Shown here in pieces: positions 6,791-64,000 of a DNA stretch of 64,000 bases. Position numbers and translations under genes: made by a program. Position 1 is the stretch's first letter; each line of letters starts with the position of its first letter. The notes under the pieces are model-generated. The model worked only from the letters and a program-made list of their open reading frames with translations, was not told the origin of the DNA and did not search any database. The DNA comes from Heterodontus francisci (lineage: Eukaryota). Where the stretch lies: assembly GCF_036365525.1 (NCBI RefSeq), contig NC_090395.1, positions 65,187,326-65,251,325 of the forward strand, read 5' to 3'.

Positions 6791-29510
<22,720 letters not shown>

Positions 29511-35977: not shown

Positions 35978-36160
35978 GGTCTTCTAAACAACCGTCAAGT
36001 TTCATTCGCACTTGTCTTTTCCGCCTCGTCGAAAAGTTTGTGTTTTTCATTTGTTGTATATTATTTGTCCGTTTTGCTTCAATACTTCGACGCTGAAGGT
36101 CATCCCATAATCGAAATGGAAGTATCCTGTTAATCTCTGATCGTAGCTCTGTTTCAAGTT

Positions 36161-36273
36161 CCAGTTCCCAAGAAGGGTCACTGACCCGAAACGTTAACTC
36201 TGCTTCTCTCTCCACAGATGCTGCCAGACCTGCTGAGTATTTCCAGCATTTCTTGTTTTTATTTTAGATTTCC
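36161..36273 (+). mobile_element. Young Penelope-like terminal fragment with hammerhead motif
   Basis: ccagtt-CCCAAGA-agggtcactgaccc-GAAA-cgtt-aact...; near-identical to 39745-39849 and 52155-52290. Confidence 0.85.
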
Positions 36274-46900: not shown

Positions 46901-48199
46901 TTTTCTAAACTCTAGAACCTTTTTAAAAAGGTTCTATTCATGGGAAGTGGGGTATTGCTGGCAAGGCCAGCATTTATTGCCATCCCTAACTGTCCTTAAG
47001 GTGGTGGTGAGTCACATTCTTGAACCCCTGCAATTCTTGTGTAGGTTCACCCACAGTTTTTCTTTGAGCTTCTTTAAATAATTTTGTTGTTTTTAAAACA
47101 TCAAAGAATATGATTGGAAAGAAGGATTCAACCAGACCAGAAAACAAAAGCATTACTTTCTCTGTAATTTTTGATTTGTTTCATGCATACAAGCCCCTCT
47201 TCTTGCCTCCCCCATTTTCTTTAGTCTCATAGTCTTCAGGTGAATTGAGACTCTGACTTATCATCCCCCTCCAATAACATATATACAGTTCTCTTAACCT
47301 TTAGTCTCTTCCCTGCCCCCCAACTAAAACATCCAGATACAGAATAATTTTCAGAACCCTGATAAACTAAGGTTCTGGTAATTTACAAGGTCTACTAAAA
47401 GAATATTTCTCAGCAACTTTGCAAACCACTTAAATTCAACAAAATCAGATGCCAAACAAAACCAATCCACTTTTTAAAAAAACATTTTCAACTTAGTGCA
47501 TCTTAATGACAGGAAAGTTTAACTGTCTTAGACAGAAGATGCTGGAAATACAGGAGGCTAATAAGAGCTGAAGGACAAAGGCAATGATGCAACATCCGAT
47601 GAGGTTCAAAGGTGAAGGATGTAATGAAAAGAAAGGTACGTGAGGTAGATCAACAACAAAATGGACTTAATAGTTGTTTCTGGTTCAAAATTCTGTGTTT
47701 TTCTTGGCCTATTCAAAACTCGGATGGGATGCAAGCAACTCTAATCCCTGCCCTATCCCCCAAACTGCAACCCCATCTCTCTTGTTCTTTACGTTTCAGG
47801 GAGTTCTCCAAATCTATGTGGAAATTTTTGCACGTTGTGATTGAATTTTCCATTGCCAATTTTTGTTCCTAATGTGGGTTCAGAGTTAAACTCTTGATGC
47901 TTTACAAAAAACATTAACAAGGGTGCATTTGGTGTTTTTGTCATTCTTTCTCTTCACTTGCCAATGAAATCCAGCAAAAATGTGGAATTTTTTTTTGTTC
48001 TGTCCGGGAAGATTAAGAGCACAGGGAGAATTCAAGTGAAAATAAAGAAAAATAAAATTTCAAAGTGCATTCAGACTCAGAAAACCTGGTTTTAATAGAT
48101 CTCTGGCATACATCTTATTTCTTGTAGATCAATTATTAAGAATAATTTTGGAATGCTTGAAATACAAATATATATAGAAATGATGGAATATTTATAGGG

Positions 48200-48378
48200 C
48201 AGGTCTGGAGACAAAACAGTGTTTCAGGTCCATGACCTTTCATCAAAACTGATGAAAAGTCGTTGGCCTGAAACATTAACTCTGTTTCTCTCCACAGATG
48301 CTGCCACACCTGCTGAATATTTCCAGCATTTTCTGTTTTTATTTCAGAATTCAGGCATCCGCAGTATTTTGCTTTTAT
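48200..48378. mobile_element. Penelope-like terminus with head-to-head inverted duplication, in the receptor 3'UTR
   Basis: gtttcaggtccatgacctttcatca-aaac-tgatgaaaagtcgttggcctgaaac inverted repeat. Confidence 0.8.
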
Positions 48379-48416
48379 AATTATAGAGCACTTTTTAAAC
48401 TCAAGATGTAATTGCA

Positions 48417-48588
48417 CTAGGATCTGAATGCCAGTGTAGAATATTCAACTGATTCTGAAGAATTGATCTTGATATCTCTCTTTTCCTTTTCCAAATCCTT
48501 CAAATTGGTGTAAGTTGCAGAACTTCCCTCCGTTTGAGCAGAAGGTTGAATGGTCACAGTGGAATAAATGATCGTATCTTCAGCTTCC
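48417..48588 (-). CDS. Receptor terminal exon EAEDTIIYSTVTIQPSAQTEGSSATYTNLKDLEKEKRDIKINSSESVEYSTLAFRS*
   Basis: tttaacag| acceptor, phase 2. ITIMs IIYSTV and VEYSTL plus an ITIM-like/YxN motif ATYTNL. TAG at 48419-48417. Confidence 0.85.
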
Positions 48589-51500
48589 CTGTTAAACTAA
48601 AATAAATACACCATTTAAATGCTTGAAGCTCTGTAAAGGTGATCCAACAAAGTATGTACATTGAGCTAATTACATTTCAATCAGAAATCGAGTCAGTTTC
48701 AATGCATATATTAGCTGGCTCTGACATTTAGCATTTCCAGCAGAATTTGGTTTGCACCCTGTTTTGTTTCTATCAAGTGGATTGTTCTGGACCTCTGTTC
48801 TCCAGTATATTGACAGCTTGCTGATTTTAAATGATTGAATATCATTAAAAGACTGGAGATTTCACTATGAAGGAAATCTTGCATGAAAACTATACTGCTT
48901 TCATTTTGATGTATAAAGCATTATGCTGGTGTAATACTTTAAAGTGAAGGTGTTGGGTTGGCTGAGCACTGCAACAAAGTGCCATCACCATGGTGGGTGA
49001 GTGTACATGAGCACATAGATGTACATACAGCAGAAGTGTGGTAAATTGTGTGAGCTCTTTGAGCAGTGTCACAATCATCCTCTCCTCTTGCTTCAGGGGC
49101 CTTTATGAAAAGTGCCAATCTGCGTGAATATGCAGTTAAAACTGAGTCTAGCAAAGAAGCTTGCATTAAGCAGCAAGACCAGCTGTGCAGATACATTTAG
49201 CTTGCATCTCAGATCATTGCTGTAACTGTGTCAGTGGTATAGTAGATCTGTATCTCTTCTATATCTCTAATATGATGCATGTATCAACATCAGCTTTTGT
49301 GCACTGTGTAATATATCACTAGAAGTCTTATAATTATTACACAAGCCCAGCGATGATAAGCACAGAAAAGAGTCATAGATTTCCATGACTCTAAGCTTAA
49401 TCTATTAAAATCTGTATTGGCAAGGGTATACTGTGGTTGCTTTTCTGAGTAGAAGGAAAAGAAGAAGCAACAGAAAAGTTGGCATAGGCTGATATAAAAT
49501 TGGCGAGAATGGTTTGTAGGATGCCGATGAATGCATATGTGGGTAAGGCAGAGGGATAATTCTAAAAGTACAAACATTCATAAAGACCAGCTGACCCAAT
49601 AAACCTGTCCCATACTGATTGCCCACAGTGTCTCATAGATGCCCAGTTTTGAGCTGCTTGATCTGTTCTGAACTTATCACATTTGGCACGGTGGTAGTGC
49701 CATGCAACACGATAGCAGGTATCGTCAGTGTGTAGAGGGAGCTTTGTCTCCATGTGGATTGTGCGATGGTCACTCGCACTATGCTGTCATGGATACATGC
49801 ATCTGCAACAGGTAGATTGGTAAGAGTGAGGTCTGATAGGTTTTTCCCTCTTGTTGGTTCCCTCACCACCTGCTGCAGGCCCAGTCTGTCAGATATGTCC
49901 TTCAGGAGTCAGCTCGTTCAGGCAATAATGGTGCTTCCGAGTCACTCTTGGTGATGGGCATTGAAGTCCCCCATCCAGAGTACATTCTGTGCCCATGCTA
50001 CTCAAATAGCCTATCCACATTATTTTAAAAGACTTCAATGATATCTCCCCCCAGTCAGTTCATTTCTAGCTATGATCTTTGAACTCAGAAGCAAGAGTTC
50101 TAACCACTGAACCATGGCTGACACCTGCTCTCAGTTCCTATTGGTCTCAGTATTAAAAACAACCAACTTACTTTTTAATTCACTACCCTTACTTCAAATA
50201 CCTAACTCAGATTTTAGTTCTTAAAATGAAGCTTTTGTTAAAATACATCTTATGAAAATGCAACAATAGTGCTGTTTGTGCTTAAATTTAACAATTACTG
50301 ATCTACTAAGTGTAGAATAATTGAGAAAATCCCCAGAGTTTGCAACAGTTCCTTGAACCTACCTTTGATATTCAGCTGTTGTCATAATATCACCAGTTTG
50401 TATTTCATGTTTAATATAGATTTACTTTTATTCTCTCTCTTTCTTTCAGTGCCTGTCTGGCTTAACAACCTAGAAAATGACTCTAACTGTTCCTGTCTGT
50501 CACTTGCAATAAACTCAGTTCCATCTCTAGAAAAAAGTCCCACCGGCCATGGTACCTAAGGGTCTTTAAACTGAGATCAACCTTGTGACCCTCTAAAGCT
50601 TTTCCAGGACATCTATATCACCTAACATGTGGGTGAACCAACATTTGGACACTGTATTCTAGATGGGGTCTTACCAAGGTCTCGTACAAGGATTGTATAT
50701 TGTTTTAAATTTTGTACCTGATCAATGCATCCTAGGAGTCTCTCTGCTTTTGTTATAGCCTCATGGCATTGGTAATGAACCTTCAAAGCTTTAACAGCAA
50801 CAATAAATTGTATTTATAGAGCACCTTTAACGTAAGAAAATATCCCAAGGCCCTTCACAGGAGCATTAGAAAACAAAATATGACGCTGACCAGATAAGGA
50901 GATATTAGGTCAGATGACCAAAAGCTTGGCCAATGAAGTAGGTTTTAAGGAGTGGCTTAAAGGAGGCAAGTGAGGTAGAGAGGCAGAGAGGTGTAGGAAG
51001 GCAATTCCAGAGCTCGGGGCCTAGGTGACTGAAAGTACGGCCACCAAAAGTGGAGCGATTAAAATTGGGATGCTCGAGGCCAGAATTAGATGAGCATGGG
51101 TATCTCGGAGGGTTGTAGGACTGGAGGAGATTACAGAGATAGGGAGGGGGCGAGGCCATGGAGGGATTTGAAAACGAGGATGGAAATTTTAAAATCAAGG
51201 TGTTGCTTGACTGGGAGCCGGTGTAGGTCAGCAAGCACACGGGTGATAGGTGAATGGGACTTGGTATGAGTTAAGACACAGGCAGCAAAGTTTTGAATTA
51301 CATCAAATCTATGGAGAGTATAATGCGAGAGATCAATGAGGCATGAATGAGGGTTTCAGCAGCAGATGAGCTGAGACAGGGGTGAAGTCGGCAATGCTAC
51401 ACATGTGGAAATATGTGGTCTTAGTGATGGCGTGAATAGGAGGTCGGAAGCACATGTCTGGGTCAAATATGACATCAAGGTTGCGAATAGGCTGGTTTAA

Positions 51501-54500
51501 TCTCAGACTGTTGCCAGGGAGATGCTTGGAGTCAATAGCTAGGGAACGGTGCTTACAGCAGGGACCAAAAACAATGGCTTCAGTCCTCCCAATATTTGAT
51601 TGGTAGACGTTTCAGTTCACCCAGTACTGGATGTTGGGTAAACAGTTTGATAATTTGGCAACAGTGGAGGAGCTGATAAAGGTGTGGTGAGGTAGAACTG
51701 GGTGTTGTCAGCTACATGTGAAAACTAACTCTCTGTTTTCGAATTGACGTGCAATGACACTAGTTCTTTCTCTCACTTGACTGCATTTGCAACTCCACGT
51801 AATGCACCCATGCTTGATCTGATCCCGATCCATAATACTCCATTTATTTCTATTAAGTGACCTGTCATTGCTTCATCACATATAGATTTGCTTGTATTCT
51901 ATTTTTCATCTCAATATCTCCATCACATAAAGATGGCAGAAAGCAACAGCTTTAACACAAATCCCTGTTTGACTCCACGAGTAACTGATCCGCACTTAGA
52001 AATAGTGTCACTAATAATGGTCTTCTGCCTACAAAGATGCAACTAATTCTATACCAAACCCCATATCTACCCACTGATCCCATGCAACTGTATTTTGTTA
52101 GAGTCTATCATGTACACCTTGTCAAAATCTTTGAAAACCAAGGTATCCAATTACAATAAAAGCAAAATACTGCGGATGCTGGAAATCTGAAATAAAAACA
52201 AGAAATGCTGGAACCACTCAGCAGGTCTGGCAGCATCTGTGGAAAGAGAAGCAGAGTTAACGTTTCGGGTCAGTGACCCTTCTTCGGAACGCTGACGCCA
52301 TTGCCGGGACAGACATCCACGTGATCGGGAGGGGGAGTCGACCCACCCTGGCTATTTAAATGAGCTGCCGTGCATAGCTTCAGCACCCCAAATGCAGGGA
52401 GAGAAGAATTGGCCAGAATTTCTGCCCCAGATGCTATCCAGTAATTCCTGTTAGATGTTCTATTCGTGGACATTGGGTGCGAACAGGATAAGCCTTGGCT
52501 GTGGTACCCACTGCAGTTGATTAGCCTGCTGATATTCACTGCCTAGGCTTGTGTGAAAAACGGCCAATTGGCTGAGGTGCGAAAGGGCAAACAGTGGCAA
52601 TTGTGTTTTAACAAAGCGTCAGTGTCTTGAGAAGGAGGGGGAGAGAAAGGAAATAAAGAATTGAGTGCCTGTAATTTTGTAAACTGCATGGAATTACTGC
52701 AAATTCGGCTACGGTGGTGAATGCTGGAATGAAATGACTCAGGATCTCACACGATATTTTGTTCCATTGGATGGTGAATTTTAATGGAGTTCCCTCTCTC
52801 CCCAATCCCATGTGTTGGAATGGAAAGATTGCTTTAATCATTATACTTCTCATTAAATTTTTATATTGCTTATACGTCAAATAAATACCTACAAAGTTGT
52901 CCAAAATAGGTTTGGTGCGAGGGGCGAAATGTTCTTGGTTGGGTCACAATCCCAACGTCGGCTACAATGCAGGGTGGGGAACTCTGAATTGGCTGTGGCG
53001 GGATGTTGGTCGCAATCTTCCTGGAGGCGTTCAATTAAGAATCCGCCTCCAGGAGCCCCATCCCATTAAGGGCAGACCATGGAAGCGGGAGGTCCAATAG
53101 GAGGACTTGCAGCAATATCCGGTTGGCAGTCCCACTGGGAAAGGTGGGGGATACTGAGGCAGGCAAGAGGCTGTGACGGTGCCTCAAGATGGAGGCGCTC
53201 TCTGCAGCATCGGAAAAAGTTAAAGATTGCGCATGGCCACAGTTGTAAGGCCATCAATGTGAAAGTGGAGCCCCTCCACAGGAAGGCCTGCAGCCCCGGC
53301 TGTGGCCGTCGCATCCCTGTGGATCTGTGCTGGAGTGGAGGCGTAGATGGACACCCCCCCGGCTCTAATTGCCTGCTGTCTCCAGCCTCAATGGGGGATG
53401 GTGTGGTGGGGTGGGGGGAGCCCTTCTGCTGTTGGGAAGATCCCGGCTGCTCCATCACCTTTCCCCCAAATGGCACCTTAATGAGCCTAATCGACTACCT
53501 GCCACTGCCTTGCAGGTAGCTTCTGCCACATAGACTCTGCCTTGGGCAAGAGCGCTTGGAAGTGGGAGTGCATCTGATAGCCAACACAACGCACTATTTT
53601 GCAGCTTTACTCCTAGTTCTGCTTCCTAGCCCTCCTCTGCGGAACTGGGTAAATATAGCCCATCTATGTGTCTCTGATTAGAAAGTAGTTATTTTCTATT
53701 TTATATCAATTTTAATATTGTACTATTGCACTGTTCCATTTGCCTATTTATTTCAGAAAAATGTTTTCCTTGCTACTTACCCCCATTTCCGGTTGTTTTC
53801 GGCCTTTTCTTTCTCCGTATAAATAGAACCAGCACAGCTGCGAGGATGATGTACCATATTTTTTGGGCAGTATTACTAAAATATTGAAGTAGAATAGTTG
53901 AAACTAAGGCTTTGTACAGACAATAAAATAAGGGAAAACAATGCTTAGTTGTTTGAACTAAATAGAAGAATCGGTCTTTACTGTAATTATCCCTGAGCTA
54001 TGTTCTGGTGAGACTAGCTCTCACTGAGGGTGCACTGCAGCAACTTGCCAAGGCTTCTTGGACAACACCTTCTAAACCTACGACCTCTACCTCCTAGAAG
54101 GACAAGGACAGCAGGTGTATGGGAGCACCATCAACTTCAAGTTCCTGTCCGAAACACATTATCCTGACTTGGAAATATATCACCATTCCTTCACCATTGC
54201 TGGGTCAAAGTCCTGGAACTCCCTACCTAACAGCACTGTGGGAGCACCTTCACCACATGGACTGCAGCGGTTCAAGATGGCGGCTTATCTTCATCTTCTC
54301 AAGGGCAATTTGGGATGGGCAATAAATGTTGACCTAGCCAATGATGCTCAGATCCAATGAATGAATAAAACTGAGTGTTTTCCATGTTGGAAGGAAATCA
54401 GAAGAAAGTAGTAATGCATATCTCTCATAGGATTGCCGAATAAACCATTATTGCTAGGGCCTGGAAAAATTCTGCTTCCTGATTTTTGAAATGATTGTAT

Positions 54501-57500
54501 TAAACGGGGAAACAATTAACAAGAATTATGAGGAAATGTACAGCACTATGAAGGATGTGTGGACTGTGGTAGGTTTAAAGACGTCAGCATTGCTTAGCAT
54601 AACTCGTGAGGGCAGCAGAATTATTTATTGATTGTGACTTCAATCAAAATGACTCAAAAATTGTTATTTTGAAGACAACTATTAAATCTTACCTTGTGAT
54701 ATTGCTGGGATCTGTTGGCCTTCCGATTGTCACTAGGAGATTTGTTAAAGTAAACAAAACACCTCGATAAATAACTGATCGCAATCCACAACACAACTTT
54801 TATCTTCATTAAAACTTACATTACTTAAGAAGATGAACGCGATGGACGTGTGGGGGCGGGTGAGCGGCAGAGGGGACATATTTTATTCAGTCTGAACATT
54901 GGCTGATTTCATTTCCTTAGGCCAATTGGTCAAATTCTGGATGAATGAACAAAGATGGATTGACCAGACTTCTTTGTCCTTCCAAATCCGCTACCTCTAC
55001 TACCTAGAAGGACAAGGGCAGCAGATGCATTGGGAACACCACCACGTGCAGTTTCCCCTCCAAGGCACACACCATCCTGACTTGGGACTATAATCGCCGT
55101 TTCTTCACTGTTGTTGGGTCAATGTCCTGGAACTTCCTTCCTGCCAGCACTGTTGGTGTACCTACACCCCAAGGATTGCAGCAGTTCAAGAAGGCAGCTC
55201 ACCACCATCTTCTCAAGGGCAATTCGGGATGGCCAATAAATTCTGGCCTAGTCAGCGATGCCACATCCCATGAACGAATAGTAACAAAAAATGCCATGTA
55301 ATCTTGTGAAAAGGCAGTCTGAGGAAAAGCTGGATTCAGTTAGTGGGAGAAATGACACACGCATTTTATAAAGGGGCTAACAGTGTTAGAGACTCAACAC
55401 TCTGTGAGGTGTAGCACAACCTTTCCATTTATTTTTATGAAGGTACTAGTGTACGTTTCTAAACTGTTTCTGGACTTTTATCCCATTTTTCTATGTACTT
55501 CTGGCCTGGCGCCACTGTTAAGAGGATGGGTGAACAGCTTGTTCTGAGACCACCATCAATGATCACTTTAATCAGCCACCAGGGGCGGAATTTTCTCAGC
55601 TTTAAAAGTTTCCAGACACTGGGTCCAATTCCAGGTCCTGACCCCACTCGCTTCTGCAGTACGCCTTCCAAAGCAATCTTATGGGAGATGGTCAATTAAG
55701 AGGCTGCTTTCACATTCACCATCCAATTAAGGTTGGCAAGCAGGGTGCTGAGGCAGGAGGCCCAATGAGAGAGCCCCGAGCACAGGATGCCCAGCAGCCC
55801 CACAGGAAGAGGTGGGGATTGGGAGGGCGCCTCAAAATGGAGACGCTCTCGAAAGCCTGCTGGAGGGCCAGTCCTCTTGCGCTTGGTGTGCTCTCATTGG
55901 GCTTCCTGCCTCGGCAACCCACTTGCCATCCTTAATTGGATGGTGTATGCAGAAGCGGCCTCTTAATTAGCTGTTAGAGCCATCAGTGTGGTGGGGGGGA
56001 GCCCCTTCACAGGATTGATTGTGGCCGCAGCTGGAGCCCTTTCATCCATACAGCTCAGTGATTGGGGGATTGAGAGGAGGCTCCAATGGCTCCTGGGCCT
56101 GCTGCCAGGAGGCCGCTTCCAAGTAGTTGCTGGGCACCGGCCTCAGTGGTGTCCGGCCCGACACCAGGAACATGCCGGCGGCTTCTGAAAATGGCCCCTA
56201 AATGCGGCCTTTAGGTGTCTGAAACCACCTAGATATGACTCCACCCTCTGATACTTTTCTCCCCTGTGTAGGGAAATACTACTCAATTTCTCGCTGGCCA
56301 GTGTGGGAAAACTCAAAATGGGAGAGAATTTACGACAGAGCTGCGTCAATATATTTGCCACTGAATGGAGCTGCTCTCCCTCCCCCCATAAACTGACTGA
56401 GATACAGCACTGGACCAGCGACTGAAATAAACAGGAATAATCCTGTCTTCATTGACTTCCCATCCTCACATTGTATTCATTGAAAGTGATTCCAACACAT
56501 GTTTTATGTCCAGGTTAAGATGTCAATTAATCTAAATTTTTTGAATTCTATGTCTTGCCGCAAACAATAATATAATTAAACTTTATCGTACAATATGTAT
56601 GAGCGACATACCATCCTGACTTGGGAATATTATTTTGTTCCCTCACTGTCAGTGGGTTAAGATTCTGGAACTCCCTACACCAGAAGGACTGCAGTGGTAC
56701 AAGAAAGTAGCTCTCTACCACCTTCTCGAGGGCAATTAGGGGTTGGGCAATAAATGCTGGCCTTGCCAGCGATGCCCACATCCCACGGCTGAATGAAAAA
56801 AAAAGATGCAGAGATGTTTCCACTTACTGGGGCGGTGGGGGGTGGGGGGGGGGGGTGTTGCGAGGTGGCAGTGGGCAGTGGTGATGGTGGTGGGGAACCA
56901 AACCTAAGGAATTCAGGGAAAAAAGTTCTTTACCCAGAGAGTTGTTGGAACGTGGAACTCACTACCACAAGGAATAGTTGTTATGAATCGCACAGATGCA
57001 TTTAAGGGGAAGGGAGATGAGGAAAGGAATAGAAGATATGCTGAAAAGGTCTGATGAAGTAGGGTGGAAGGATGCCCATGTGCAGCATAAGCACTGGCAT
57101 TTGACCCATTGTTACATAGAGCTTACAGCACAGAAACAGTGAATTATCACAATTTTATATTGATTCTTACCTTCAGCAATTGTCAGGACTTTAACCTGTG
57201 TGATCTCTATGTCAAGTATTTTTTCTCTTCCACACCAGTACTCCCCTTTATCTCCTTTACTAACGCTGCTCATGGTAACAGCAAAATTATGATCATTGTT
57301 AGTAGTGATTGAAACTCTTCCATTATACAGACTTCCTATAACTCCATTAGAGCTGGCTATAATGGTGCACTTATCTTCAGAGGTTACTTTACACAGGAAT
57401 TTCTTATAGTATTTATACTGCTTTGAGTACAGACATGGTACAGTGGTGGCATTTCCCATTATGCCATTGACCTCTGATAGGATTGGTTCCCAAGAATCTG

Positions 57501-60500
57501 TTGGTGAATGAAAAAAAGTCATTAAAATTTCAAAATGCGGAAAAACTGAACATCTTGCATCGCACAAAATATAAACTTAATTAGCCAAATGTTGAAAATG
57601 TCAAAAATCTTTTCTATTCTTCAAGTACGAAGAGCATTATAGAGCCATAGAGCCCAGTGTAACCACTGACGGCCCATGTGTTCACTTTCTGCCCATTCTA
57701 ATACTATATTGTGTATATTTTTCACAATATTTCATATGTTGGTCCAAATTTGGTAAATCCTCTCTGCTTTCTGTAAATGCGGTGCAAACACTTAACATGT
57801 TAGGGTAACATTTCTAAATAGATAGGTAACTCCATATATAGTACAAGTCAAGAAAGAGACCTGTGGATAGTGTTGGTTATACACTAAAGATATGCAAGCA
57901 ATGTTAGGTTGTTATTTATAAGTCAGATAGAGTTTTAATGTGTATTGCTAGAAGCTGATTTTTTTAACTGTATGCAAGTGGATGGGTTTGAATGAGTTAA
58001 AATCTTGCCCATTCAGTTCAAAATGGACTATGCAAGGCTGAGTTCATTCACCCTTGAAGTATTGAAGGTGAAGTCAATGGAAAAGAAAATTAGGAGGCAT
58101 GGGAAACAGGCTGCCGATTCACAATCACCCATTTTGTGCTATTGCCCAAGACCAATTGCATCCCCATTTGGGCCTGAGTTCATTACTGCCCGTAGCCGGA
58201 TGCAATCTGTGCAGCATGAAGAATGGAGAGGCCCATGGATCTTCCTAAATTAGGGGAGGGGAGGAGGAGGTGATGATTGAAGGTTGTTGGGGGAGGGGGT
58301 GGTGGTGTAAGCGTGGACTTCATGTGTTTGCAGCCTTAATGTGGCGGTAGGAGGAACAGGGCTGCAGGCTTTTCCAAGGCCTCCACTTACCCGATTAGGC
58401 TGCTGTAAAGCCTTTAGTCGAAGCTTGAAGTAACATGCCCTCCAACTTGTTTTGATGAAGTGACACCAATGGGTCACAGAAGATTCATTTCAATATTGAA
58501 ATGACGACTACATTCATTTCAGGCAGCTGCCATTGCTGCTTTATAAAAGGGCGCACTGAATTAAACAGTATCCCAGACAGCTGGAGAAATTAGCGATGTT
58601 TTACTATGGAGATCTGGAGGTTCTAATGGAATTTAAAAAAATTCTTTCATGGGATGTGAGCATCGCTGGCTAGGCCATCATTTGTTGCCCATCCCTAATT
58701 GCCCTTGAGAAGGTGGTGACGAGCCGCCTTCTTGAACCACTGCAGTGCCTCTAGTGTAGGTACACCCATCATACTGTTAGGAAGGGTGTTCCAGGATTTT
58801 GACCCGGCAATAATGAAAGAATGGTAATCCACACCCAAGTCAGGATGATGGGTGGCTTGGAGGGGAACTTGTAGGTGGTGGTGTTCCCATGCATCTGCTG
58901 CCCTTGTCCTTCCAGGTGGTAGAGGTTGTGGGTTTGGAAGGTGCAGTTGAAGGAGCATTGCTGCAGTGCATCTTGCAGATGGTACACACTGCTGCCACTG
59001 TGCACCGATGGTGGAGGGAGTGAATGTTGAAGCTGGTCGATAGGGTGCAAATCAAGCAGGCTGCTTTGTCCTAGAATGTGTTGAGCTTCTTGAGTGTTGT
59101 TGGAGCTGAACCCATTCAGGCAAGTGGAGAATATTCCATCACACTCCTGACTTGTGCCCTGTAGATGATGGACAGCCACTGAGGAGACAGGTGGTGAGTT
59201 ACTTACCACAGAATTCCCTGCCTCTGATTTGTTCTTGTAGCCACAGCATTTATGTAGCTAGTCCAGCTCAGTTTATGGTCAATGGTGACCCCCAGGATGT
59301 TGATAGTGGGGGATTCAGCAATGGTAATGCCATTGAACGTCAAGGGGAGATGGCTAGATTCTCTCTTGTTTGAGATGGTCATTGCCCGGCACTTGTGTGG
59401 CGCAAATTTTACTTGCCACTTATTAGCCCAAACCTGAATGTTGTCCAGGTTTTGTTGCATGTGGACATGGACTGCTTCAGTATTTGATGAGCTGTGAATG
59501 GTATTGAACACTGTGCAATCATCAGGCAACATCCCCATTTTCTGACCTTATGGTAGAAGGAAAGTCATTGATGAAGCAGCTGACGTTGGTTGGGCCTAGG
59601 ACACTACCCTGAGGAACTCGTGCAGTGATGTTCAGGGGCTTAGATGTTTGGCCTCTAACAGTCAATATTTCTTTGTGCTAGGTATGACTCCAACCAGTGG
59701 AGAGTTTACCTCCTGATTCCCATTAACTTCAATTTGCCTAGGATTTCTTGACACCACACTTGGTCAAATGCTGCCTTGATGTCAAGGGTAGTCACTCTCA
59801 CCTCACCTCTTGAATTCAGCTCTTTTGTCCTTGTTTGGACCAAGGCTGCAATGAGGCCCGGAGCTGAGTGGCCTTGGCGGAACCCAAACCTGCATGGTGA
59901 GCAGGTTATTGCTGAGAAAGTGCTGCTTGATAGTACTATTGATGATTCCTTTCATTGCCTTGATGATGATCGAGAGTAGACTGATGGGGCGGTAATTGGC
60001 TGGAATGGATTTATCCTGCTTTTTGTGGACAGGACATACCTGGGCAATTTTCCACATTGCCGGGTAGATGCCAGCGTTGTAGCTGTATTGGAACAGCTTG
60101 GCTAGGGGCGCGGCTAGTTCTGGAGCACAAGTCTTCAGTACTACAACCGAGTTGTCGTCGGGCCCCGTAGCCTTTGCTGTATCCAGTGCCTTCAGCTGTC
60201 TCTTGATATCACGTGGAGTGAATTGAGTTGGCTGAAGACTGACATCTATGATGCTGGGGACCTCAGGAGGAGGCTGAGATGGATCATCCACTTGGCACAT
60301 CTGGCTGAAGATGTTTGCAAATTTAAGATTTGTAGAATTATGAGGGAAAGGATGTCTAAATAGGTTGATGGAGATAGTTAGGAATGGTAGGATGAGAGGT
60401 TATTATTTGATGCATAAACATTCCTAGTATGTGCTGCATTGTGCACAGGGAGCATGACAATAGCTGAGTAAGCTGAGCTCATATTATGGCCCACACAGCC

Positions 60501-62416
60501 CCCTGAAGAACAACAGTCCTGGTGTTATTGCAACCAGATCACATTATCAGCCCTATAATCTTTTGAAAAATTCTTACCTGTGAAAACTTTCAGTAATATA
60601 ACATCTGAAATACTGATAGAAGTCTCATGTTTTGGTCCACAGAAGTAAGTTCCTGTGTCTGTCTCCTGAAGTTGTGTTATGGTAACAGAAATCAATCCAT
60701 TGGCATTAGTGATCGATGTTCTTCTGTCATAATTCCTGTCCATATATTTGTTTGTGCTCATTATAATATTGCACCAAGTTTTGGAATTTGCTTTACACCA
60801 GATTACAGAGTTTTGGATCCCTGCCTGTGGACATTCCACAGTGACTGTTTCTCCCACTGCAGCTTTCACCACTGTTGATGCAGTTTGTGTCCGCAAAGCT
60901 GTTGGGTGAAATTTAACATTTTAAGAAAGCTGGAAATATCACAACGATCAATTTTAGTCAATCCTTTTGGCACATCACAGATAACAAATGCAAATGCTTC
61001 ATCAGGGGGCAAAAGAAGTCCTGAAAGGGACTGGAATCAGAGAATCTTACAGAAGGGACCATTCAGCCCTTCGTGCCTGTGCCAGCTCTTCGAAAAGCTG
61101 TCCAACTTAATCCCACAACCCAACTCTTCTTCATAACTTTGCACATTAGTTCTCTTCAACTGCCTTTTGAAAATTCTTATGGAATCTGATTCCACCGCCC
61201 TTTTAAGCATTCCCGATCATAACAACCTTACTTGGGAAATAATTTCTCCTGCTGTCTCCTCTAATTCTTTTGCCAGTTATTTTATATCTATGACCTCTGG
61301 TTACCTACCCACATACCAGAGGAAACAGTTTCTCCCTATTTGCTCTATCAAAACCCTTCATAATTTCAATACCTCTATTAGCTTTCCCATTAACCTTCTC
61401 TGCTCCAAGGACAATAATACCAGCTTCTCCAAATAACTGAACTCCCTCATCCCTATTATCATCCTGGTAAACCTCTTCTGTACCATTTGCCAGGGCCTTG
61501 ATATCCTTTCTAAAGTGCAGTGCCCAGAATCGAACACAATACTCCAACTGAAACCAAGCCAGTGATTAGTAAAGGTTTAGCATGACTTCTTGTTTTTGCA
61601 TTCAATGGCTCGATTAGCAAACCCAAGTATTCCATAACTGCCTTACCATCTTGCCCTGCCATGTTCAAGGATTGTAAATATGCACCCCAAGCTCCCTCTG
61701 CTCTTACATCCCCCACAATATTGTACCATTTAGGTAATACTGCGCCTCCAAGTTGTTCCGGCCAAAGTGCATCACTTCATACTTATCCACATTAAATTGT
61801 ATCTGCCATGTGCCTGCCCATTTTGCCATTCTTTCTACATCCTCCTGTTACTATCCTGATTTTCACCCTACCAGATAGACAGTGATGAGGTTGGCAGACT
61901 GGCTGCCACCATTATTTAAAGGGGCCTTCCCTTGCATGGCAGGAGCAAGCACATGTTTTGTGCAATAGGCCTCTTTGTTATTCAAATCGTACTTACCCAT
62001 TCACATTCTTGTAATGTTCGACAGTATTCCTCCGTTCCCCTCCCTGAGGGAACTCGCTATTAGTATAGCTCAAATTTCTGGTGCATTGTCTCCTCCCTTT
62101 GCCTCACCATTGAGGGCTGCATTTTCAATTAAGTCCAACTTTCTGGAATTCTATCGCTAAACCCCTCCTCCTTGTCAACTCGCTGATCTCCTTTAAGACC
62201 CTCTTTAAAGCCCATCTCTTTTACCAAGCTTTTGGTCACCCCCCACAAACTCTCCTCCTTTAGCTCAATGGCTGTATTTCTTCACTCCTCTATGAAAATC
62301 TTTGAGACATTTTTCTATGCTGAAGGCACTACATAAATTCAAGTTGTTGTTTCAAATATATCATTGATAATCTTACTTGATATCAAAGTGAGGAACAGCA
62401 GAGCAATGAACTTCAT
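48417..62416 (-). CDS. CD300/pIgR/TREM-family (CMRF35-like) receptor with two IgV domains and an ITIM-bearing terminal exon; the cytoplasmic junction is unresolved and possibly disrupted
   Basis: Leader 62416-62377, IgV1 60898-60578, IgV2 57497-57171, stalk 54732-54693 and TM 53875-53781 splice in frame with GT-AG sites. ITIM exon is 48588-48417. Confidence 0.85.
49632..50000 (-). mobile_element. CR1-clade LINE endonuclease fragment
   Basis: GDFN and VREPTRGKNLSDLTLTN on the - strand. Confidence 0.8.
50363..50469 (-). pseudogene. Putative cytoplasmic exon, apparently frame-disrupted (..GTERKRENKSKSIL / HEIQTGDIMTTAEYQ)
   Basis: cattttctag| acceptor and AG|gtaggt donor. The 3' end is in the correct phase for the ITIM exon, but all three frames contain stops. 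Confidence 0.45.
50795..51740 (-). mobile_element. L2 LINE 3' fragment inserted into an older CR1 remnant (about 50520-50790 and 51745-52150)
   Basis: ORF 50905-51240 RSTFGGRTFSHLGPELWNCLP...LASFKPLLKTYF is the L2 C-terminus. Confidence 0.85.
52155..52290 (-). mobile_element. Young Penelope-like terminal fragment with hammerhead motif
   Basis: The - strand reads gtt-CCGAAGA-agggtcactgaccc-GAAA-cgtt-aac...ttttgcttttatt. Confidence 0.88.
52920..53661. mobile_element. GC-rich MITE-like element
   Basis: ggggcgaaatgtt...aaatatagccc ends; caattaag/cttaatg internal motifs. Confidence 0.5.
53781..53875 (-). CDS. Receptor transmembrane exon NTAQKIWYIILAAVLVLFIRRKKRPKTTGNG
   Basis: ttttag| acceptor and G|gtaagt donor; hydrophobic run followed by the RRKKR stop-transfer cluster. 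Confidence 0.85.
54035..54368 (+). mobile_element. CR1-clade LINE 3' fragment (further copies at 46940-47060 -, 54980-55280 +, 56605-56800 +)
   Basis: AGSKSWNSLPNSTVG...HLLKGN 3' end shared with the 62618 element. Confidence 0.85.
54693..54732 (-). CDS. Receptor stalk exon VTIGRPTDPSNIT(S)
   Basis: ctcctag| acceptor and AG|gtaaga donor; phase 1 to 2 bridges IgV2 and TM exactly; P/T/S-rich with an NIT sequon. Confidence 0.8.
55583..56336. mobile_element. GC-rich MITE-like element
   Basis: TIR gggcggaattttctc / gagagaatttacgac; internal inverted repeat accatccaattaagg / ccttaattggatggt. Confidence 0.65.
57171..57497 (-). CDS. Receptor IgV domain 2 (DSWEP...VPCLY...KKFLCKVTSEDKC...GRVSI...DKGEYWCG...LTIAE)
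   Basis: 327-nt phase 1-1 exon with 4 Cys and the GRVSI and DxGxYWCG motifs. Confidence 0.93.
58640..60320 (-). mobile_element. CR1-clade LINE, RT to 3' end, in a receptor intron
   Basis: KATGPD, NYRPISLLS, VPQG, DD motifs; frameshifted. Confidence 0.92.
60578..60898 (-). CDS. Receptor IgV domain 1 (TLRTQ...VGETVTVEC...WCKANSKTWC...DTGTYFC...LKVFT)
   Basis: 321-nt phase 1-1 exon. Canonical V-set Cys/Trp/DxGxYxC plus the extra C-x7-C pair typical of CD300/pIgR/TREM. Confidence 0.93.
61040..61850 (-). mobile_element. CR1 3' fragment
   Basis: EYCVRFWALHFRKD on the - strand. Confidence 0.8.
62100..62350 (+). mobile_element. L2 3' tail fragment
   Basis: Same tail as the 3500-3711 region (ataaattcaagttgttg). 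Confidence 0.7.
62377..62416 (-). CDS. Receptor exon 1: signal peptide MKFIALLFLTLIS
   Basis: ggaaccATG Kozak context, hydrophobic core, phase-1 A|gtaaga donor that joins IgV1 in frame. Confidence 0.88.
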
Positions 62417-62617
62417 GGTTCCAGCGAAGGTATCCACAATTTCCAGTAACCTATCTCTGTGTTGGTCAAAGGATTTGTACTGAATCATTTACTTTCTCGT
62501 AGAATTACAGATATCTTCCCTGTATTGCATAGCATAAGAAATATTGACAAATCCTACTGTTTCACAACTTGTGTGTGTAGACATCAACAGTTGCAGTTAT
62601 GTAAAGATTTTTTTTAA

Positions 62618-64000
62618 AATTCATTCACAGGATGTGGGCGTCGCTGGCCAGGCCAGCATTTATTGCCCATCCCTAATTGCCTTTGAGAAGGTGGTGGTGA
62701 GCTGCCTTCTTGAACCGCTGCAGTCCATGTGGGGTAGGTACACCCACAGTGCTGTTAGGAAGGGAGTTCCAGGATTTTGACCCAGCGACAGTGAAGGAAC
62801 GGCGATATAGTTCCAAGTCAGGATGGTGTGTGACTTGGAGGGGAACTTGCAGATGGTGGTGTTCCCATGTATTTACTGCCCTTGTCCTTCTAGTTGGTAG
62901 AGGTTGCGGGTTTGGAAGATGCTGTCGAAGGAGCCTTGGTGCAGTGCATCTTGTAGATGGTACACACTGCTGCCACTGTGCGTCGGTGGTGGAGGGAGTG
63001 AATGTTTGTAGATGGGGTGCCAATCAAGCGGGCTGCTTTGTCCTGGATGGTGTCGAGCTTCTTGAGTGTTGTTGGAGCTGCACCCATCCAGGCAAGTGGA
63101 GAGTATTCCATCACACTCCTGACTTGTGCCTTGTAGATTGTGGACAGGCTTTGGGAAGTCAGGAGGTGAGTTACTCACCTCAGGATTCCTAGCCTCTGAC
63201 CTGCTCTTGTAGCCACGGTATTTATATGGCTACTCCAGTTCAGTTTTCAATCAATGGTAGCCCCTAGGATGTTGATAGTGGGGATTCAGCGATGGTTAAA
63301 TGTCAAGGGGAGATGGTTAGATTCTCTCTTGTTGGAGATGGTCATTGCCTGGCACTTGTGTGGCACGAATGTTACTTGCCACTTATCAGCCCAGGCCTGG
63401 ATATAGTCCAGGTCCAGGTCTTGCTGCATTTCTACACATTTCTACACAGACTGCTTCAGTATCTGAGGAGTCTTGAATGGTGCTGAACATTGTGCAATCA
63501 TCAGCGGACATCCCCACTCTGACCTTATGATTGAAGGAAGGTCATTGATGAAGCAGCTGAAGATGGTTGGGCCTAGGACACTACCCTGAGGTACTCTTGC
63601 AGCGATGTCTTGGAGCTGAGATGATTGACCTCCAACAACCACAACCATCTTCCTTTGCGCTAGGTATGACTCCAGCCAGCAGAGAGTTTTCCCCTTGATT
63701 CCCATTGACCTCAGTTTTGCTAGGGCTCCTTGATGCCATACTCGATCAAATGCTGCTTTGATGTCAAGGGCAGTCACTCTCACCTCACCTCTTGAGTTCA
63801 GCTTTTTTGTCCATGTTTGAACCAAGGCTGTAATGAGGTCAGGAGCTGAGTGGTCCTGGCGGAACCCAAACTGAGTATCACTGAGCAGGTTGTTGCTAAG
63901 CAAGTGCCGCTTGATGGCACTGTTGATGACACCTTCCATCACTTTACTGATGATTGAGAGGAGGCTAATGGGGCAGTAGTTGGCCAGGTTGGGTTTGTCC
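62618..64000 (-). mobile_element. CR1-clade LINE, RT to 3' end, running off the window
   Basis: ORF 63442-63942 [27 protein letters not shown]. Confidence 0.93.

What the first reader, a model, noticed from the sequence alone, without database searches (positions are those of the whole stretch)
48417..62416. Shark two-IgV-domain CD300/pIgR/TREM-family receptor with ITIMs, directly downstream of AHCYL1
Seen: leader, two V domains each with the extra C-x7-C disulfide pair, stalk, TM and an ITIM exon. Known: the extra pair marks the CD300/TREM/pIgR/FCMR/FCAMR superfamily; two V domains is the layout of teleost pIgR and pIgR-like proteins; a bona fide pIgR has generally been reported as missing in cartilaginous fish. 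From memory, chicken chr26 carries AHCYL1, PIGR and the TREM cluster, whereas the human downstream neighbour of AHCYL1 is STRIP1. Inference: this may be a chondrichthyan member of the ancestral pIgR/FCMR/TREM linkage group and a candidate Ig-binding or inhibitory receptor.
Basis: partly seen in the sequence, partly recalled or inferred. Interest (0 to 1): 0.75.

Follow-up and report, generated by a model that had tools for sequence, protein, structure and literature searches.

The report
Horn shark two-V-domain inhibitory receptor gene
This is a real, expressed shark immune-receptor gene with two antibody-like outer domains and an inhibitory tail, belonging to a receptor family already described in cartilaginous fish and already listed, with an incomplete tail, in the public annotation.

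Summary
A minus-strand gene (62416 to 48417) encodes a leader, two V-set domains that each carry the extra C-x7-C pair, a 40-nt stalk exon, a transmembrane (TM) exon and a last exon with two ITIMs.

It is the Heterodontus francisci RefSeq gene "polymeric immunoglobulin receptor-like". Both RefSeq isoforms lack the ITIM tail.

Transcript contigs from one sample join the TM exon to the ITIM exon through about 41 nt that keep the frame. Those letters are not in the window. Their translation matches the corresponding exon of the orthologues.

Ten tail-bearing proteins from eight other chondrichthyan species, chimaera included, keep both ITIMs. The horn-shark hydrophobic TM run is 14 residues, against 19-24 in orthologues.

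Against solved structures, V2 is nearest CD300 and V1 is nearest NKp44/FCMR. Neither is specifically pIgR D1. The neighbour is an AHCYL1- or AHCYL2-type gene, convergent, and the paralogue is unresolved.

The scan noted CD300/pIgR-like (MDIR-like) receptor genes before, on other DNA 133-560 kb beyond this window (unchecked).

Verdict: a new member of a known kind. An inhibitory receptor is likely. Ig binding is untested.

The parts
62377..62416 (-). Exon 1: start codon (ATG at 62416) and signal peptide (MKFIALLFLTLIS), donor GTAAGA, phase 1.
   Evidence: Orthologues start at the same Met. RefSeq models start at an upstream in-frame ATG at 62488.
60578..60898 (-). Exon 2: V1, a V-set domain with canonical Cys22/Cys86 and the extra pair Cys34-x7-Cys42 (numbered in the 106-aa in-frame exon translation).
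   Evidence: Pfam V-set E 5.1e-14. PDB hits to pIgR, FCMR and NKp44. Cys positions. Splice sites.
57171..57497 (-). Exon 3: V2, a V-set domain with Cys21/Cys88 and the extra pair Cys35-x7-Cys43. It is the more conserved of the two domains among orthologues.
   Evidence: Pfam V-set E 1.8e-09. PDB hits to CD300LF, CD300A and pIgR D1. Tree distances. Cys positions.
54693..54732 (-). Exon 4: 40-nt stalk exon (VTIGRPTDPSNIT), acceptor CTCCTAG, donor GTAAGA, phase 1 to 2. It ends in AG.
   Evidence: tblastn with the RefSeq protein P0151 and sequence reading. Its terminal AG explains why the RNA contigs lie 2 nt past the TM exon acceptor. My first coordinates were 2 nt off and were corrected.
53781..53875 (-). 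Exon 5: transmembrane exon (NTAQKIWYIILAAVLVLFIRRKKRPKTTGNG). The uncharged run is 14 residues, with Lys at its outer edge.
   Evidence: RNA contigs of X2, X3 and X4 lie on 53877-53777 without gaps. Translation. There is an 8-column gap against 7 of 7 orthologues in A1. Run lengths.
48417..48596 (-). Last coding exon with stop codon. ITIM 1 IIYSTV is at 48572-48555, the YTN (YxN) motif lies between, and ITIM 2 VEYSTL is at 48449-48432. The stop is at 48419-48417.
   Evidence: RNA contigs lie on 48598-48319 with 0 other letters. Orthologue tails align at 64-67% identity.
48319..48416 (-). 3' UTR, about 98 nt. AATAAA is at 48343-48338. Contigs of X1 and X3 end at 48320/48319. The UTR runs into a highly repeated SINE-like element.
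6917..28511 (+). Context: the 3' part of an AHCYL1/AHCYL2-type gene (exon fragments at about 6.9, 14.1, 15.6, 19.8, 20.6, 21.4 and 28.4 kb), convergent with the receptor gene.
   Evidence: Stop-free segments. PDB matches to human AHCYL1 (3mtg) and AHCYL2 (3gvp) with near-equal scores in 2 of 3 exons tested.

Best explanation
This is the horn-shark orthologue of a two-V-domain, ITIM-bearing receptor of the double-disulfide V-domain group (CD300 / pIgR / TREM / NKp44 / FCMR). The receptor is conserved from chimaera to sharks and rays.

Shown:
- A seven-exon gene: leader, V1, V2, stalk, TM, a roughly 41-nt cytoplasmic micro-exon, and the ITIM exon.
- It is transcribed and spliced so that the two ITIMs are in frame.
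- It would encode about 347 aa. This is summed from exon lengths. The joined protein was not built or searched.

Inferred mechanism: one or both V domains bind a conserved ligand at the cell surface. Src-family kinases then phosphorylate the Tyr of IIYSTV and VEYSTL. SH2 phosphatases (SHP-1, SHP-2 or SHIP) dock there and damp activating signals in the same cell, as for CD300A and CD300LF.

The ligand is unknown. I rate a conserved non-Ig ligand, such as a lipid (by analogy with CD300 and, from recall, zebrafish PIGRL), as more likely than immunoglobulin.

The gene sits next to an AHCYL-type gene. According to unchecked scan notes, it lies at the edge of a large cluster of related receptor genes.
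For: - Exon structure and phases.
- V-set domains with C-x7-C.
- Family similarity: pIgR, CD300LF, CD300A, NKp44, FCMR, TREM2 and TLT-1 all appear among the PDB hits.
- Identity with RefSeq XP_067913482.1 and XP_067913483.1 of Heterodontus francisci. tblastn gives 100% over the V2 and TM stretches and 97-98% over the V1 and leader stretches, where the only differences are single residues at the splice junctions. The stalk stretch is identical over its 13 exon residues.
- Contigs in X2, X3 and X4 (one sample, one study) skip 53777 to 48598 with 35 extra letters. With the ambiguous ends this is 41 nt, which restores the ITIM frame and reads GNIENTEPPIKISK.
- Orthologues have GNNQNPESPITISK, GNNENPEPPITVSK and similar at that place.
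- Unique intron bins have depth 0 in X2-X4, so these runs are RNA.
- Both ITIMs are present in 10 of 10 tail-bearing orthologue proteins checked, from 8 species.
- V1 and V2 each form chondrichthyan-only clades (37 and 35 leaves, support 0.77 and 0.98) in a tree of 537 domains.
Against: - The micro-exon letters are not in the 64-kb window on either strand: 0 matches with up to 1 mismatch, and no shared word of 11 or more. For the assembled haplotype the ITIM frame is therefore not demonstrably reachable.
- Both RefSeq isoforms lack the tail.
- All RNA evidence comes from one sample.
- The leader-V1-V2-stalk junctions were not seen in reads. They rest on splice signals, contig length and the RefSeq model.
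- The TM hydrophobic run is only 14 residues, against 19-24 in 9 orthologue proteins. Stable surface anchoring is therefore uncertain.
- The two ITIM tyrosines are 41 residues apart. From recall, that is wider than in the classic tandem-SH2 docking pairs.
- No ligand, phosphorylation or cell-type data exist.
Confidence: 0.8

Rival explanations
1. The copy in this window is a tail-less or secreted allele, or an early pseudogene. The micro-exon has been lost from the assembled haplotype, so this copy can only make the RefSeq-type products: X1 (TM plus a very short tail) and X2 (TM exon skipped, frameshifted end, soluble). The ITIM-bearing transcripts would come from the other haplotype, another individual, or a near-identical copy elsewhere.
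For: - The 35 letters are absent from the whole window.
- Joining the TM exon directly to the last exon shifts the frame and stops after about 12 codons (reading; RefSeq X2 ends LTGKLKIRSFIPL).
- There is a horn-shark-specific 8-residue TM deletion, and YFC replaces YWC in V1, against 7 of 7 orthologues in A1.
- X1 contigs show 2 single-letter differences from the window within the laid stretch (52352 in this intron, 53898 just upstream of the TM exon), so a second haplotype or individual is in the data.
- The earlier first-reader note s1-873672 proposed this.
Against: - The spliced contigs match the window's flanking exons with 0 of 280 and 1 of 101 other letters.
- No second Heterodontus protein of this group turned up in three protein searches.
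- A small assembly omission or a heterozygous indel would explain the gap equally well.
- All other exons are intact and the gene is well expressed.
Confidence: 0.3
2. It is the long-sought cartilaginous-fish functional counterpart of pIgR (or of an IgM Fc receptor). The V domains would bind polymeric, J-chain-containing IgM, and the receptor would transport or sense it.
For: - The highest summed sequence and fold scores are to tetrapod pIgR ectodomains (275 bits; Foldseek E 1.7e-16).
- V1's nearest non-chondrichthyan tree neighbours include D1 of turtle and bird pIgR-named proteins.
- V1 matches FCMR at 47 bits.
- The two-V layout is that of teleost pIgR (PMC9321927 passages).
- Sharks have J chain (PMC10801876 passages).
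Against: - The summed scores are inflated by five target domains. Among single-domain chains CD300LF (63) beats pIgR D1 (47 and 43) for V2, and NKp44 (55) beats FCMR (47) for V1.
- Pairing with teleost pIgR domains is crosswise.
- The tail is a conserved ITIM tail, not a transcytosis-type tail.
- PMC10801876 (passage read) states that J chain in elasmobranchs serves only IgM polymerisation.
- The tree held no CD300, TREM, NKp44 or FCMR references, so it cannot favour pIgR over them.
Confidence: 0.08
3. It is simply one more fast-evolving member of the lineage-specific MDIR / CD300-like multigene expansion, without a conserved individual function.
For: Scan notes list many CD300/pIgR-like and MDIR-like genes 133-560 kb beyond the window's end on the same piece (unchecked). 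Scyliorhinus and Mustelus show extra copies or isoforms, and Mustelus has a duplicated V1.
Against: Architecture, the micro-exon and both ITIMs are kept in 8 other species including a chimaera. V1 and V2 clades contain only this group, and distances roughly follow sharks, then batoids, then chimaera. This is the pattern of a conserved orthologue, not of birth-and-death turnover.
Confidence: 0.12

Closest known systems
RefSeq XP_067913482.1 / XP_067913483.1, 'polymeric immunoglobulin receptor-like' isoforms X1/X2, Heterodontus francisci (P0151, P0001)
   Same: It is the same gene. The leader, V1, V2, stalk and (in X1) TM exons are those of the window.
   Different: Both models start at an upstream ATG (62488) and lack the micro-exon and the ITIM tail. 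X1 stops just after the TM exon. X2 skips the TM exon and ends in a frameshifted LTGKLKIRSFIPL. RNA contigs show an ITIM-bearing form.
Chondrichthyan orthologues named 'pIgR-like' or 'CMRF35-like molecule' (Pristiophorus P0004, Heptranchias P0162, Carcharodon P0164, Scyliorhinus P0166, Hemiscyllium P0167, Pristis P0153, Mobula P0174, Mustelus P0163/P0165, Callorhinchus P0173)
   Same: They share the leader, V1, V2, short stalk, TM, micro-exon and two ITIMs. Identity to the horn-shark RefSeq protein is 36-61%.
   Different: Their uncharged TM run is 19-24 residues against 14 here. Mustelus has a third V domain (a duplicated V1). These are automatic predictions, and no functional study was found.
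CD300LF / CD300A (CMRF35-like molecules), mammals
   Same: They have a V domain with the extra disulfide and are the best single-domain PDB match of V2 (63 and 53 bits). From recall, they carry ITIMs in the tail that recruit SHP-1/SHP-2 and they sense lipids.
   Different: They have one V domain and a longer mucin-like stalk. Orthology was not tested, because no CD300 sequence could be put in the tree.
pIgR (tetrapod, five or four domains; teleost, two domains)
   Same: Tandem double-disulfide V domains, and the highest summed sequence and fold scores. The teleost form also has two V domains.
   Different: From recall, the pIgR tail has no ITIMs and drives transcytosis. Per-domain scores do not favour pIgR D1. 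The best domain pairing with teleost pIgR is crosswise.
Skate MDIRs (modular domain immune-type receptors) and zebrafish PIGRL proteins
   Same: MDIRs are a cartilaginous-fish multigene family of activating and inhibitory receptors resembling CD300, TREM and pIgR (PMC3031540 passages). Zebrafish PIGRL form a multigene family beside a single two-Ig pigr gene; the Cx7C motif is stated in print for that pigr gene (PMC9321927 and bioRxiv 10.1101/2022.04.21.489081 passages). That PIGRLs carry ITIMs and bind phospholipids is recalled only; Kortum 2014 is not held.
   Different: No MDIR or PIGRL sequence was available here, so similarity was not measured. This gene looks like a conserved single orthologue and not a variable family member.

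Membership tests
Double-disulfide V-domain group (CD300 / pIgR / FCMR / FCAMR / TREM / NKp44) | V-set Ig fold | tested here: met
   Pfam V-set E 5.1e-14 and 1.8e-09. In the AF2 model the ten-residue blocks covering both domains average pLDDT 71-95.
Double-disulfide V-domain group (CD300 / pIgR / FCMR / FCAMR / TREM / NKp44) | Second Cys pair, C-x(6-9)-C, after the first canonical Cys | tested here: met
   C-x7-C occurs once in each domain. The motif range is as described in bioRxiv 10.1101/2022.04.21.489081 (passage). Disulfide formation itself is not testable here.
Double-disulfide V-domain group (CD300 / pIgR / FCMR / FCAMR / TREM / NKp44) | Significant sequence similarity to several member families | tested here: met
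   pIgR, CD300LF, CD300A, NKp44, FCMR, TREM2 and TLT-1 all score E 3e-07 or better.
Bona fide pIgR | N-terminal domain of pIgR D1 type, closer to pIgR D1 than to other families | tested here: not met
   V1's best single-domain hits are NKp44 (55 bits), FCMR (47) and TREM2 (41). pIgR D1 chains match V2 (47 and 43 bits), below CD300LF at 63.
Bona fide pIgR | Cytoplasmic tail with sorting/transcytosis signals and without ITIMs (recalled definition) | tested here: not met
   The tail has two ITIMs, conserved in 10 of 10 orthologue proteins. pIgR sorting motifs were not searched for.
Bona fide pIgR | Binding of polymeric Ig and expression in mucosal epithelium | not testable with these tools
   The tissue of the RNA sample is coded. 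There are no binding data.
Bona fide pIgR | Conserved synteny with the PIGR locus | not testable with these tools
   No vertebrate genome collection is available. The only neighbour in the window is an AHCYL-type gene. Scan notes held no PIGR-region genes.
CD300 family | Single V domain followed by a stalk, TM and either ITIMs or a charged TM | tested here: not met
   There are two V domains. ITIMs are present.
ITIM-bearing inhibitory receptors (functional class) | At least one (I/V/L/S)xYxx(I/V/L) motif in the cytoplasmic tail, in frame with a TM segment in the mRNA | tested here: met
   There are two motifs. The frame is joined by RNA contigs through the 41-nt segment. The caveat is that this segment is not in the window.
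ITIM-bearing inhibitory receptors (functional class) | Tyr phosphorylation and SHP-1/SHP-2/SHIP recruitment | not testable with these tools
   This needs cell experiments.
Skate-type MDIR family | Sequence relatedness to MDIR1-4 and membership of the clustered multigene family | not tested
   MDIR sequences (accessions listed in PMC3031540) could not be fetched. The cluster context rests on unchecked scan notes.

The most novel reading that the evidence does not exclude
This deeply conserved two-V, two-ITIM receptor, sitting at the edge of the shark double-disulfide receptor cluster, may be the chondrichthyan representative of the lineage that later gave pIgR, FCAMR and FCMR. It would work as an inhibitory receptor for polymeric IgM, which would be the oldest Fc-type receptor for antibody. 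A second strand: horn sharks may carry a natural presence/absence polymorphism of the 41-nt micro-exon, switching the same gene between an inhibitory, a tail-less and a secreted form.
Probability: 0.1. Interest if true: 0.75.

Novelty: new member of a known kind. Interest (0 to 1): 0.33.

Why it matters
If the reading is right, cartilaginous fish keep one conserved, ITIM-signalling, two-V-domain member of the CD300/pIgR/TREM group. That contrasts with the fast-changing members around it.

A conserved receptor of this age (the chimaera-shark split) is a practical starting point for asking what the ancestral ligand of this receptor group was, lipid or immunoglobulin.

There is also a practical point. 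The public horn-shark gene models miss the inhibitory tail, because a 41-nt exon is not in the reference sequence. Surveys that count inhibitory versus activating receptors from annotation alone would misclassify this gene.

Tried and rejected
- **Word-based search with the V2 segment.** The search for homologous proteins on the 154-aa V2 stop-free segment found nothing. This is the length window and word filter, not absence. The exhaustive search then found 1180 relatives.
- **TM acceptor at 53909.** I first took an acceptor at 53909 for the TM exon because it kept phase 1 from V2. RNA contigs and the RefSeq protein showed the real acceptor at 53875, plus a separate 40-nt stalk exon. The first idea was dropped.
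- **Hunt for the micro-exon in the window.** Exact and 1-mismatch pattern search, words of 10-16 letters, blastn-short, and tblastn with orthologue proteins all drew a blank.
- **AHCYL1 versus AHCYL2.** Three exons against human 3mtg and 3gvp scored 64.8 vs 64.9, 62.0 vs 60.6, and 81.3 vs 72.1 bits. The last gap reflects a shorter 3gvp construct. Residue differences point both ways, so this stays unresolved.
- **Profile search for named bony-vertebrate references.** One search returned only chondrichthyan proteins (21 of 8000 candidates scored). The domain tree therefore has no CD300, TREM, NKp44, FCMR or FCAMR rows. For that tree, 40 of 577 domain hits covering fewer than 76 profile positions were dropped.
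- **ESM Atlas.** It gave only generic V-set clusters, with pIgR-like and FCAMR-like rows at 0.92 for V2.
- **Fold search.** It ranks pIgR ectodomains first, then scFvs. It does not discriminate within the group.
- **Scan-note searches for AHCYL/STRIP/CSF1 and for IL10/MAPKAPK2/FCMR.** Neither found anything.
- **Papers not held.** Flowers et al. 2021 (Eur J Immunol 51:2590; I saw only reference-list entries) and Kortum et al. 2014 are not held. From recall only, Flowers et al. describe this superfamily in sharks and chimaeras as a single cluster syntenic with the human PIGR locus. If so, the linkage idea is already in print. I could not read it.
- **Supplements.** No supplementary files were opened.
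- **Retroelement guess.** Pfam found nothing in 3 of 3 long plus-strand stop-free stretches at 37.3-39.1 kb, which I had guessed to be a retroelement.

Full report
**What is in the sequence**

The finding lies on the minus strand. Two long stop-free segments (60920-60528 and 57576-57115) are V-set domains, with Pfam E-values of 5.1e-14 and 1.8e-09.

The exons, with splice signals and phases read from the sequence:
- Exon 1: 62416-62377, ATG, MKFIALLFLTLIS, donor GTAAGA.
- V1: 60898-60578.
- V2: 57497-57171.
- Stalk exon: 54732-54693, 40 nt, VTIGRPTDPSNIT.
- TM exon: 53875-53781.
- Last coding exon: 48596-48420, stop at 48419-48417.

Each V domain has four cysteines, including one C-x7-C. The last exon has IIYSTV and VEYSTL, both ITIM-type, with a YTN between them.

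A profile of the orthologous V domains matches only these 2 of 781 stop-free segments of 40 aa or more in the six frames of the window. There is therefore no third V exon and no second such gene in the window. That profile includes this gene's own sequence, so only the absence of other matches is informative.

**The neighbour**

Plus-strand exon fragments between about 6.9 and 28.5 kb belong to an AHCYL-type gene. Three exons compared with human AHCYL1 (3mtg) and AHCYL2 (3gvp) gave 64.8 vs 64.9, 62.0 vs 60.6 and 81.3 vs 72.1 bits. The last gap comes from a shorter AHCYL2 construct, and the residue differences point both ways.

The two genes are convergent, with about 20 kb of repeat-rich DNA between their 3' ends. 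'Downstream of AHCYL1' is thus right in position but not shown in paralogue identity.

**Identity of the gene**

An exhaustive phmmer search with the V2 exon found 1180 proteins at E up to 0.001. The best hit, P0001 (E 7.7e-74), is RefSeq XP_067913483.1, 'polymeric immunoglobulin receptor-like isoform X2' of Heterodontus francisci. Isoform X1 (P0151) is in the same cluster.

By tblastn the V2 and TM stretches of P0151 are 100% identical to the window. The V1 and leader stretches are 97-98% identical, and the only differences are single residues at the splice junctions. The stalk stretch matches over its 13 exon residues. The gene is therefore already in automatic annotation.

Neither RefSeq isoform has the ITIM tail. 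X1 ends just after the TM exon. X2 skips the TM exon and ends in a frameshifted LTGKLKIRSFIPL.

**RNA evidence and the missing micro-exon**

The run search gave four runs of one sample and one study. I laid them on 48300-54200.

- In X2, X3 and X4 the unique intron bins have depth 0. One contig per run skips from 53777 to 48598, so these are transcripts.
- X1 also covers the intron at depth about 5-10, against about 500 on the last exon. This looks like pre-mRNA.
- The spliced contigs carry 35 letters between the two exons.
- With the 4 + 2 letters at the ends, which fit both the window and the insert, the inserted piece is 41 nt. That is exactly the length class needed to pass from phase 1 at the TM exon to phase 0 at 48596.
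- In that frame it reads GNIENTEPPIKISK without a stop.

These 35 letters occur nowhere in the window on either strand. There were 0 matches with up to 1 mismatch, no shared word of 11 or more letters, and no blastn-short or tblastn hit. The first-stage note that the ITIM tail cannot be reached in frame (s1-873672) is therefore right for the window's letters and wrong for the transcripts.

Contig lengths fit the full model. X3's 1187-nt contig leaves 45 nt of 5' UTR once the exons are summed. It ends at 48319, 18-19 nt after an AATAAA at 48343-48338.

The upstream junctions (leader-V1-V2-stalk-TM) were not seen in reads. They rest on splice signals, on this length fit and on the RefSeq model.

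**Orthologues**

Searches with the sawshark protein P0004, and with an alignment, found only chondrichthyan proteins (17 and 21 hits). Seven full-length orthologues were aligned with P0151 (A1): Pristiophorus, Heptranchias, Carcharodon, Scyliorhinus torazame, Hemiscyllium, Pristis and Callorhinchus.

- All seven have leader, V1, V2, short stalk, TM, a micro-exon-sized block and the ITIM exon. Examples of the block are GNNQNPESPITISK, GNNENPEPPITVSK and GKNENPESPTLTSK.
- The horn-shark RNA-derived peptide shares 9 of 14 residues with the sawshark block. This is independent support that the 41 nt are the true exon.
- Both ITIMs are present in 10 of 10 tail-bearing proteins checked, from 8 species.
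- The horn-shark TM exon has an 8-column gap against 7 of 7 orthologues. Its uncharged run is 14 residues, against 19-24 in 9 orthologue proteins.
- The RNA contigs match the window there without gaps, so the short TM is real. This confirms the first-stage note s1-873779.

**Which known family**

Single-sequence and profile searches of solved structures hit pIgR, CD300LF, CD300A, NKp44, FCMR, TREM2 and TLT-1.

The very high totals for pIgR (275 bits) sum several target domains. Single-domain chains compare as follows:

| Domain | Best single-domain matches (bits) |
|---|---|
| V2 | CD300LF 63 and 60; CLM-6 58; CD300A 53; pIgR D1 47 and 43 |
| V1 | NKp44 55; FCMR 47; TREM2 41 |

Against the two-domain teleost pIgR, V2 pairs best with D1 and V1 with D2.

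I built a FastTree of 537 domains from 176 proteins, after dropping 40 short domain hits. In it V1 and V2 sit in chondrichthyan-only clades of 37 and 35 leaves, with support 0.77 and 0.98. The sister of V1 is a coelacanth four-domain protein (0.85). The sister of V2 is unresolved (0.09). The tree contains no CD300, TREM, NKp44 or FCMR rows, because none could be fetched, so it cannot decide between those families.

The AF2 model (mean pLDDT 75; the ten-residue blocks covering the V domains average 71-95) finds pIgR ectodomains first by Foldseek (E 1.7e-16), then scFvs. The ESM Atlas gave generic V-set clusters.

My conclusion is that this is a member of the double-disulfide V-domain group, not assignable to pIgR. 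The name 'pIgR-like' is an annotation habit.

**Literature**

- Akula et al. 2014 reported no PIGR homologue in sharks (PMC4016189, passages).
- Skate MDIRs are described as a cartilaginous-fish multigene family of activating and inhibitory receptors resembling CD300, TREM and pIgR (PMC3031540, passages).
- Zebrafish has one two-Ig pigr gene, for which the Cx7C motif is stated, plus a PIGRL family (PMC9321927 and bioRxiv 10.1101/2022.04.21.489081, passages).
- Flowers et al. 2021 and Kortum et al. 2014 are not held. What I say of them is recalled.
- I found no paper on this particular orthologue group in searches. That covers only the held library.

**Context from the scan**

Notes on the same piece list CD300/pIgR-like and MDIR-like receptor genes 133-560 kb beyond the window's end. 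Two of them were followed up as known-family members. I did not check them. If they are right, this gene is the terminal member of that cluster, next to the AHCYL-type gene.

**How it most likely works**

Shown: the architecture, the in-frame ITIM tail in transcripts, and conservation across Chondrichthyes.

Inferred: ligand binding by the V domains, ITIM phosphorylation by Src-family kinases, and SHP/SHIP recruitment that damps activation, as for CD300A and CD300LF.

The ligand is open. V2 is the more conserved domain (tree distances 0.43-0.66 among sharks, against 0.62-1.0 for V1) and it is CD300-like. For that reason I lean towards a conserved non-Ig ligand. Ig binding stays possible but unsupported.

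Two features could weaken signalling in the horn shark: the short TM, and, in the assembled haplotype, the missing micro-exon.

**Verdict**

The gene is real and expressed. It is a new member of a known kind, already annotated but with an incomplete model. The unexplained item worth a follow-up is where the 41-nt exon is in the genome.

Noticed in passing
between window 53781 and 48596 (minus strand intron): The roughly 41-nt cytoplasmic micro-exon seen in RNA contigs of X2, X3 and X4 is not present anywhere in the 64-kb window. Possible causes are an assembly omission, a heterozygous deletion or another locus. It remains unexplained.
   Followed up: partly
window 62488-62417 (minus strand): The RefSeq models start at an upstream in-frame ATG, adding 24 residues before the signal peptide. 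Orthologues start at the Met of 62416, and contig length suggests a 5' UTR of only about 45 nt, so the upstream ATG is probably not in the transcript.
   Followed up: partly
window 48139-48380, also 52043-52436 and 36097-36264: A SINE-like repeat with very high RNA depth (up to about 480,000 summed word depth) recurs here. The receptor's 3' UTR runs into one copy, and the AATAAA at 48343-48338 lies within that span and appears to serve as the poly(A) signal.
   Followed up: partly
window 43561-44070 (-), 63445-63999 (-), 11274-12092 (+): These are LINE fragments. The first is an endonuclease domain (Exo_endo_phos, E 1.1e-11). The other two are reverse transcriptase domains (RVT_1, E 8.7e-25 and 7.1e-22). 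They lie in the intergenic region, upstream of the receptor gene, and in an AHCYL intron respectively.
   Followed up: yes
window 36900-39100 (+): Long overlapping stop-free stretches lie in a region of strongly negative GC skew (-0.23 to -0.31). All 3 pieces tested gave no Pfam match. I guessed a retroelement, which is unconfirmed.
   Followed up: partly
window 28491-28511 (+): The AHCYL-type reading frame stays open for 6 codons beyond the ...NYYRY end of the human proteins before the stop.
   Followed up: no
proteins P0002, P0163, P0165 (Mustelus asterias); P0008, P0166, P0168, P0169 (Scyliorhinus torazame): In Mustelus the V1 domain is duplicated, giving three V domains. One isoform (P0165) keeps the ITIM tail without a TM run. 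Some Mustelus, Scyliorhinus and Callorhinchus proteins of the group carry a different TM and tail (W..RW-type) without ITIMs. This may indicate paired or alternative forms.
   Followed up: no
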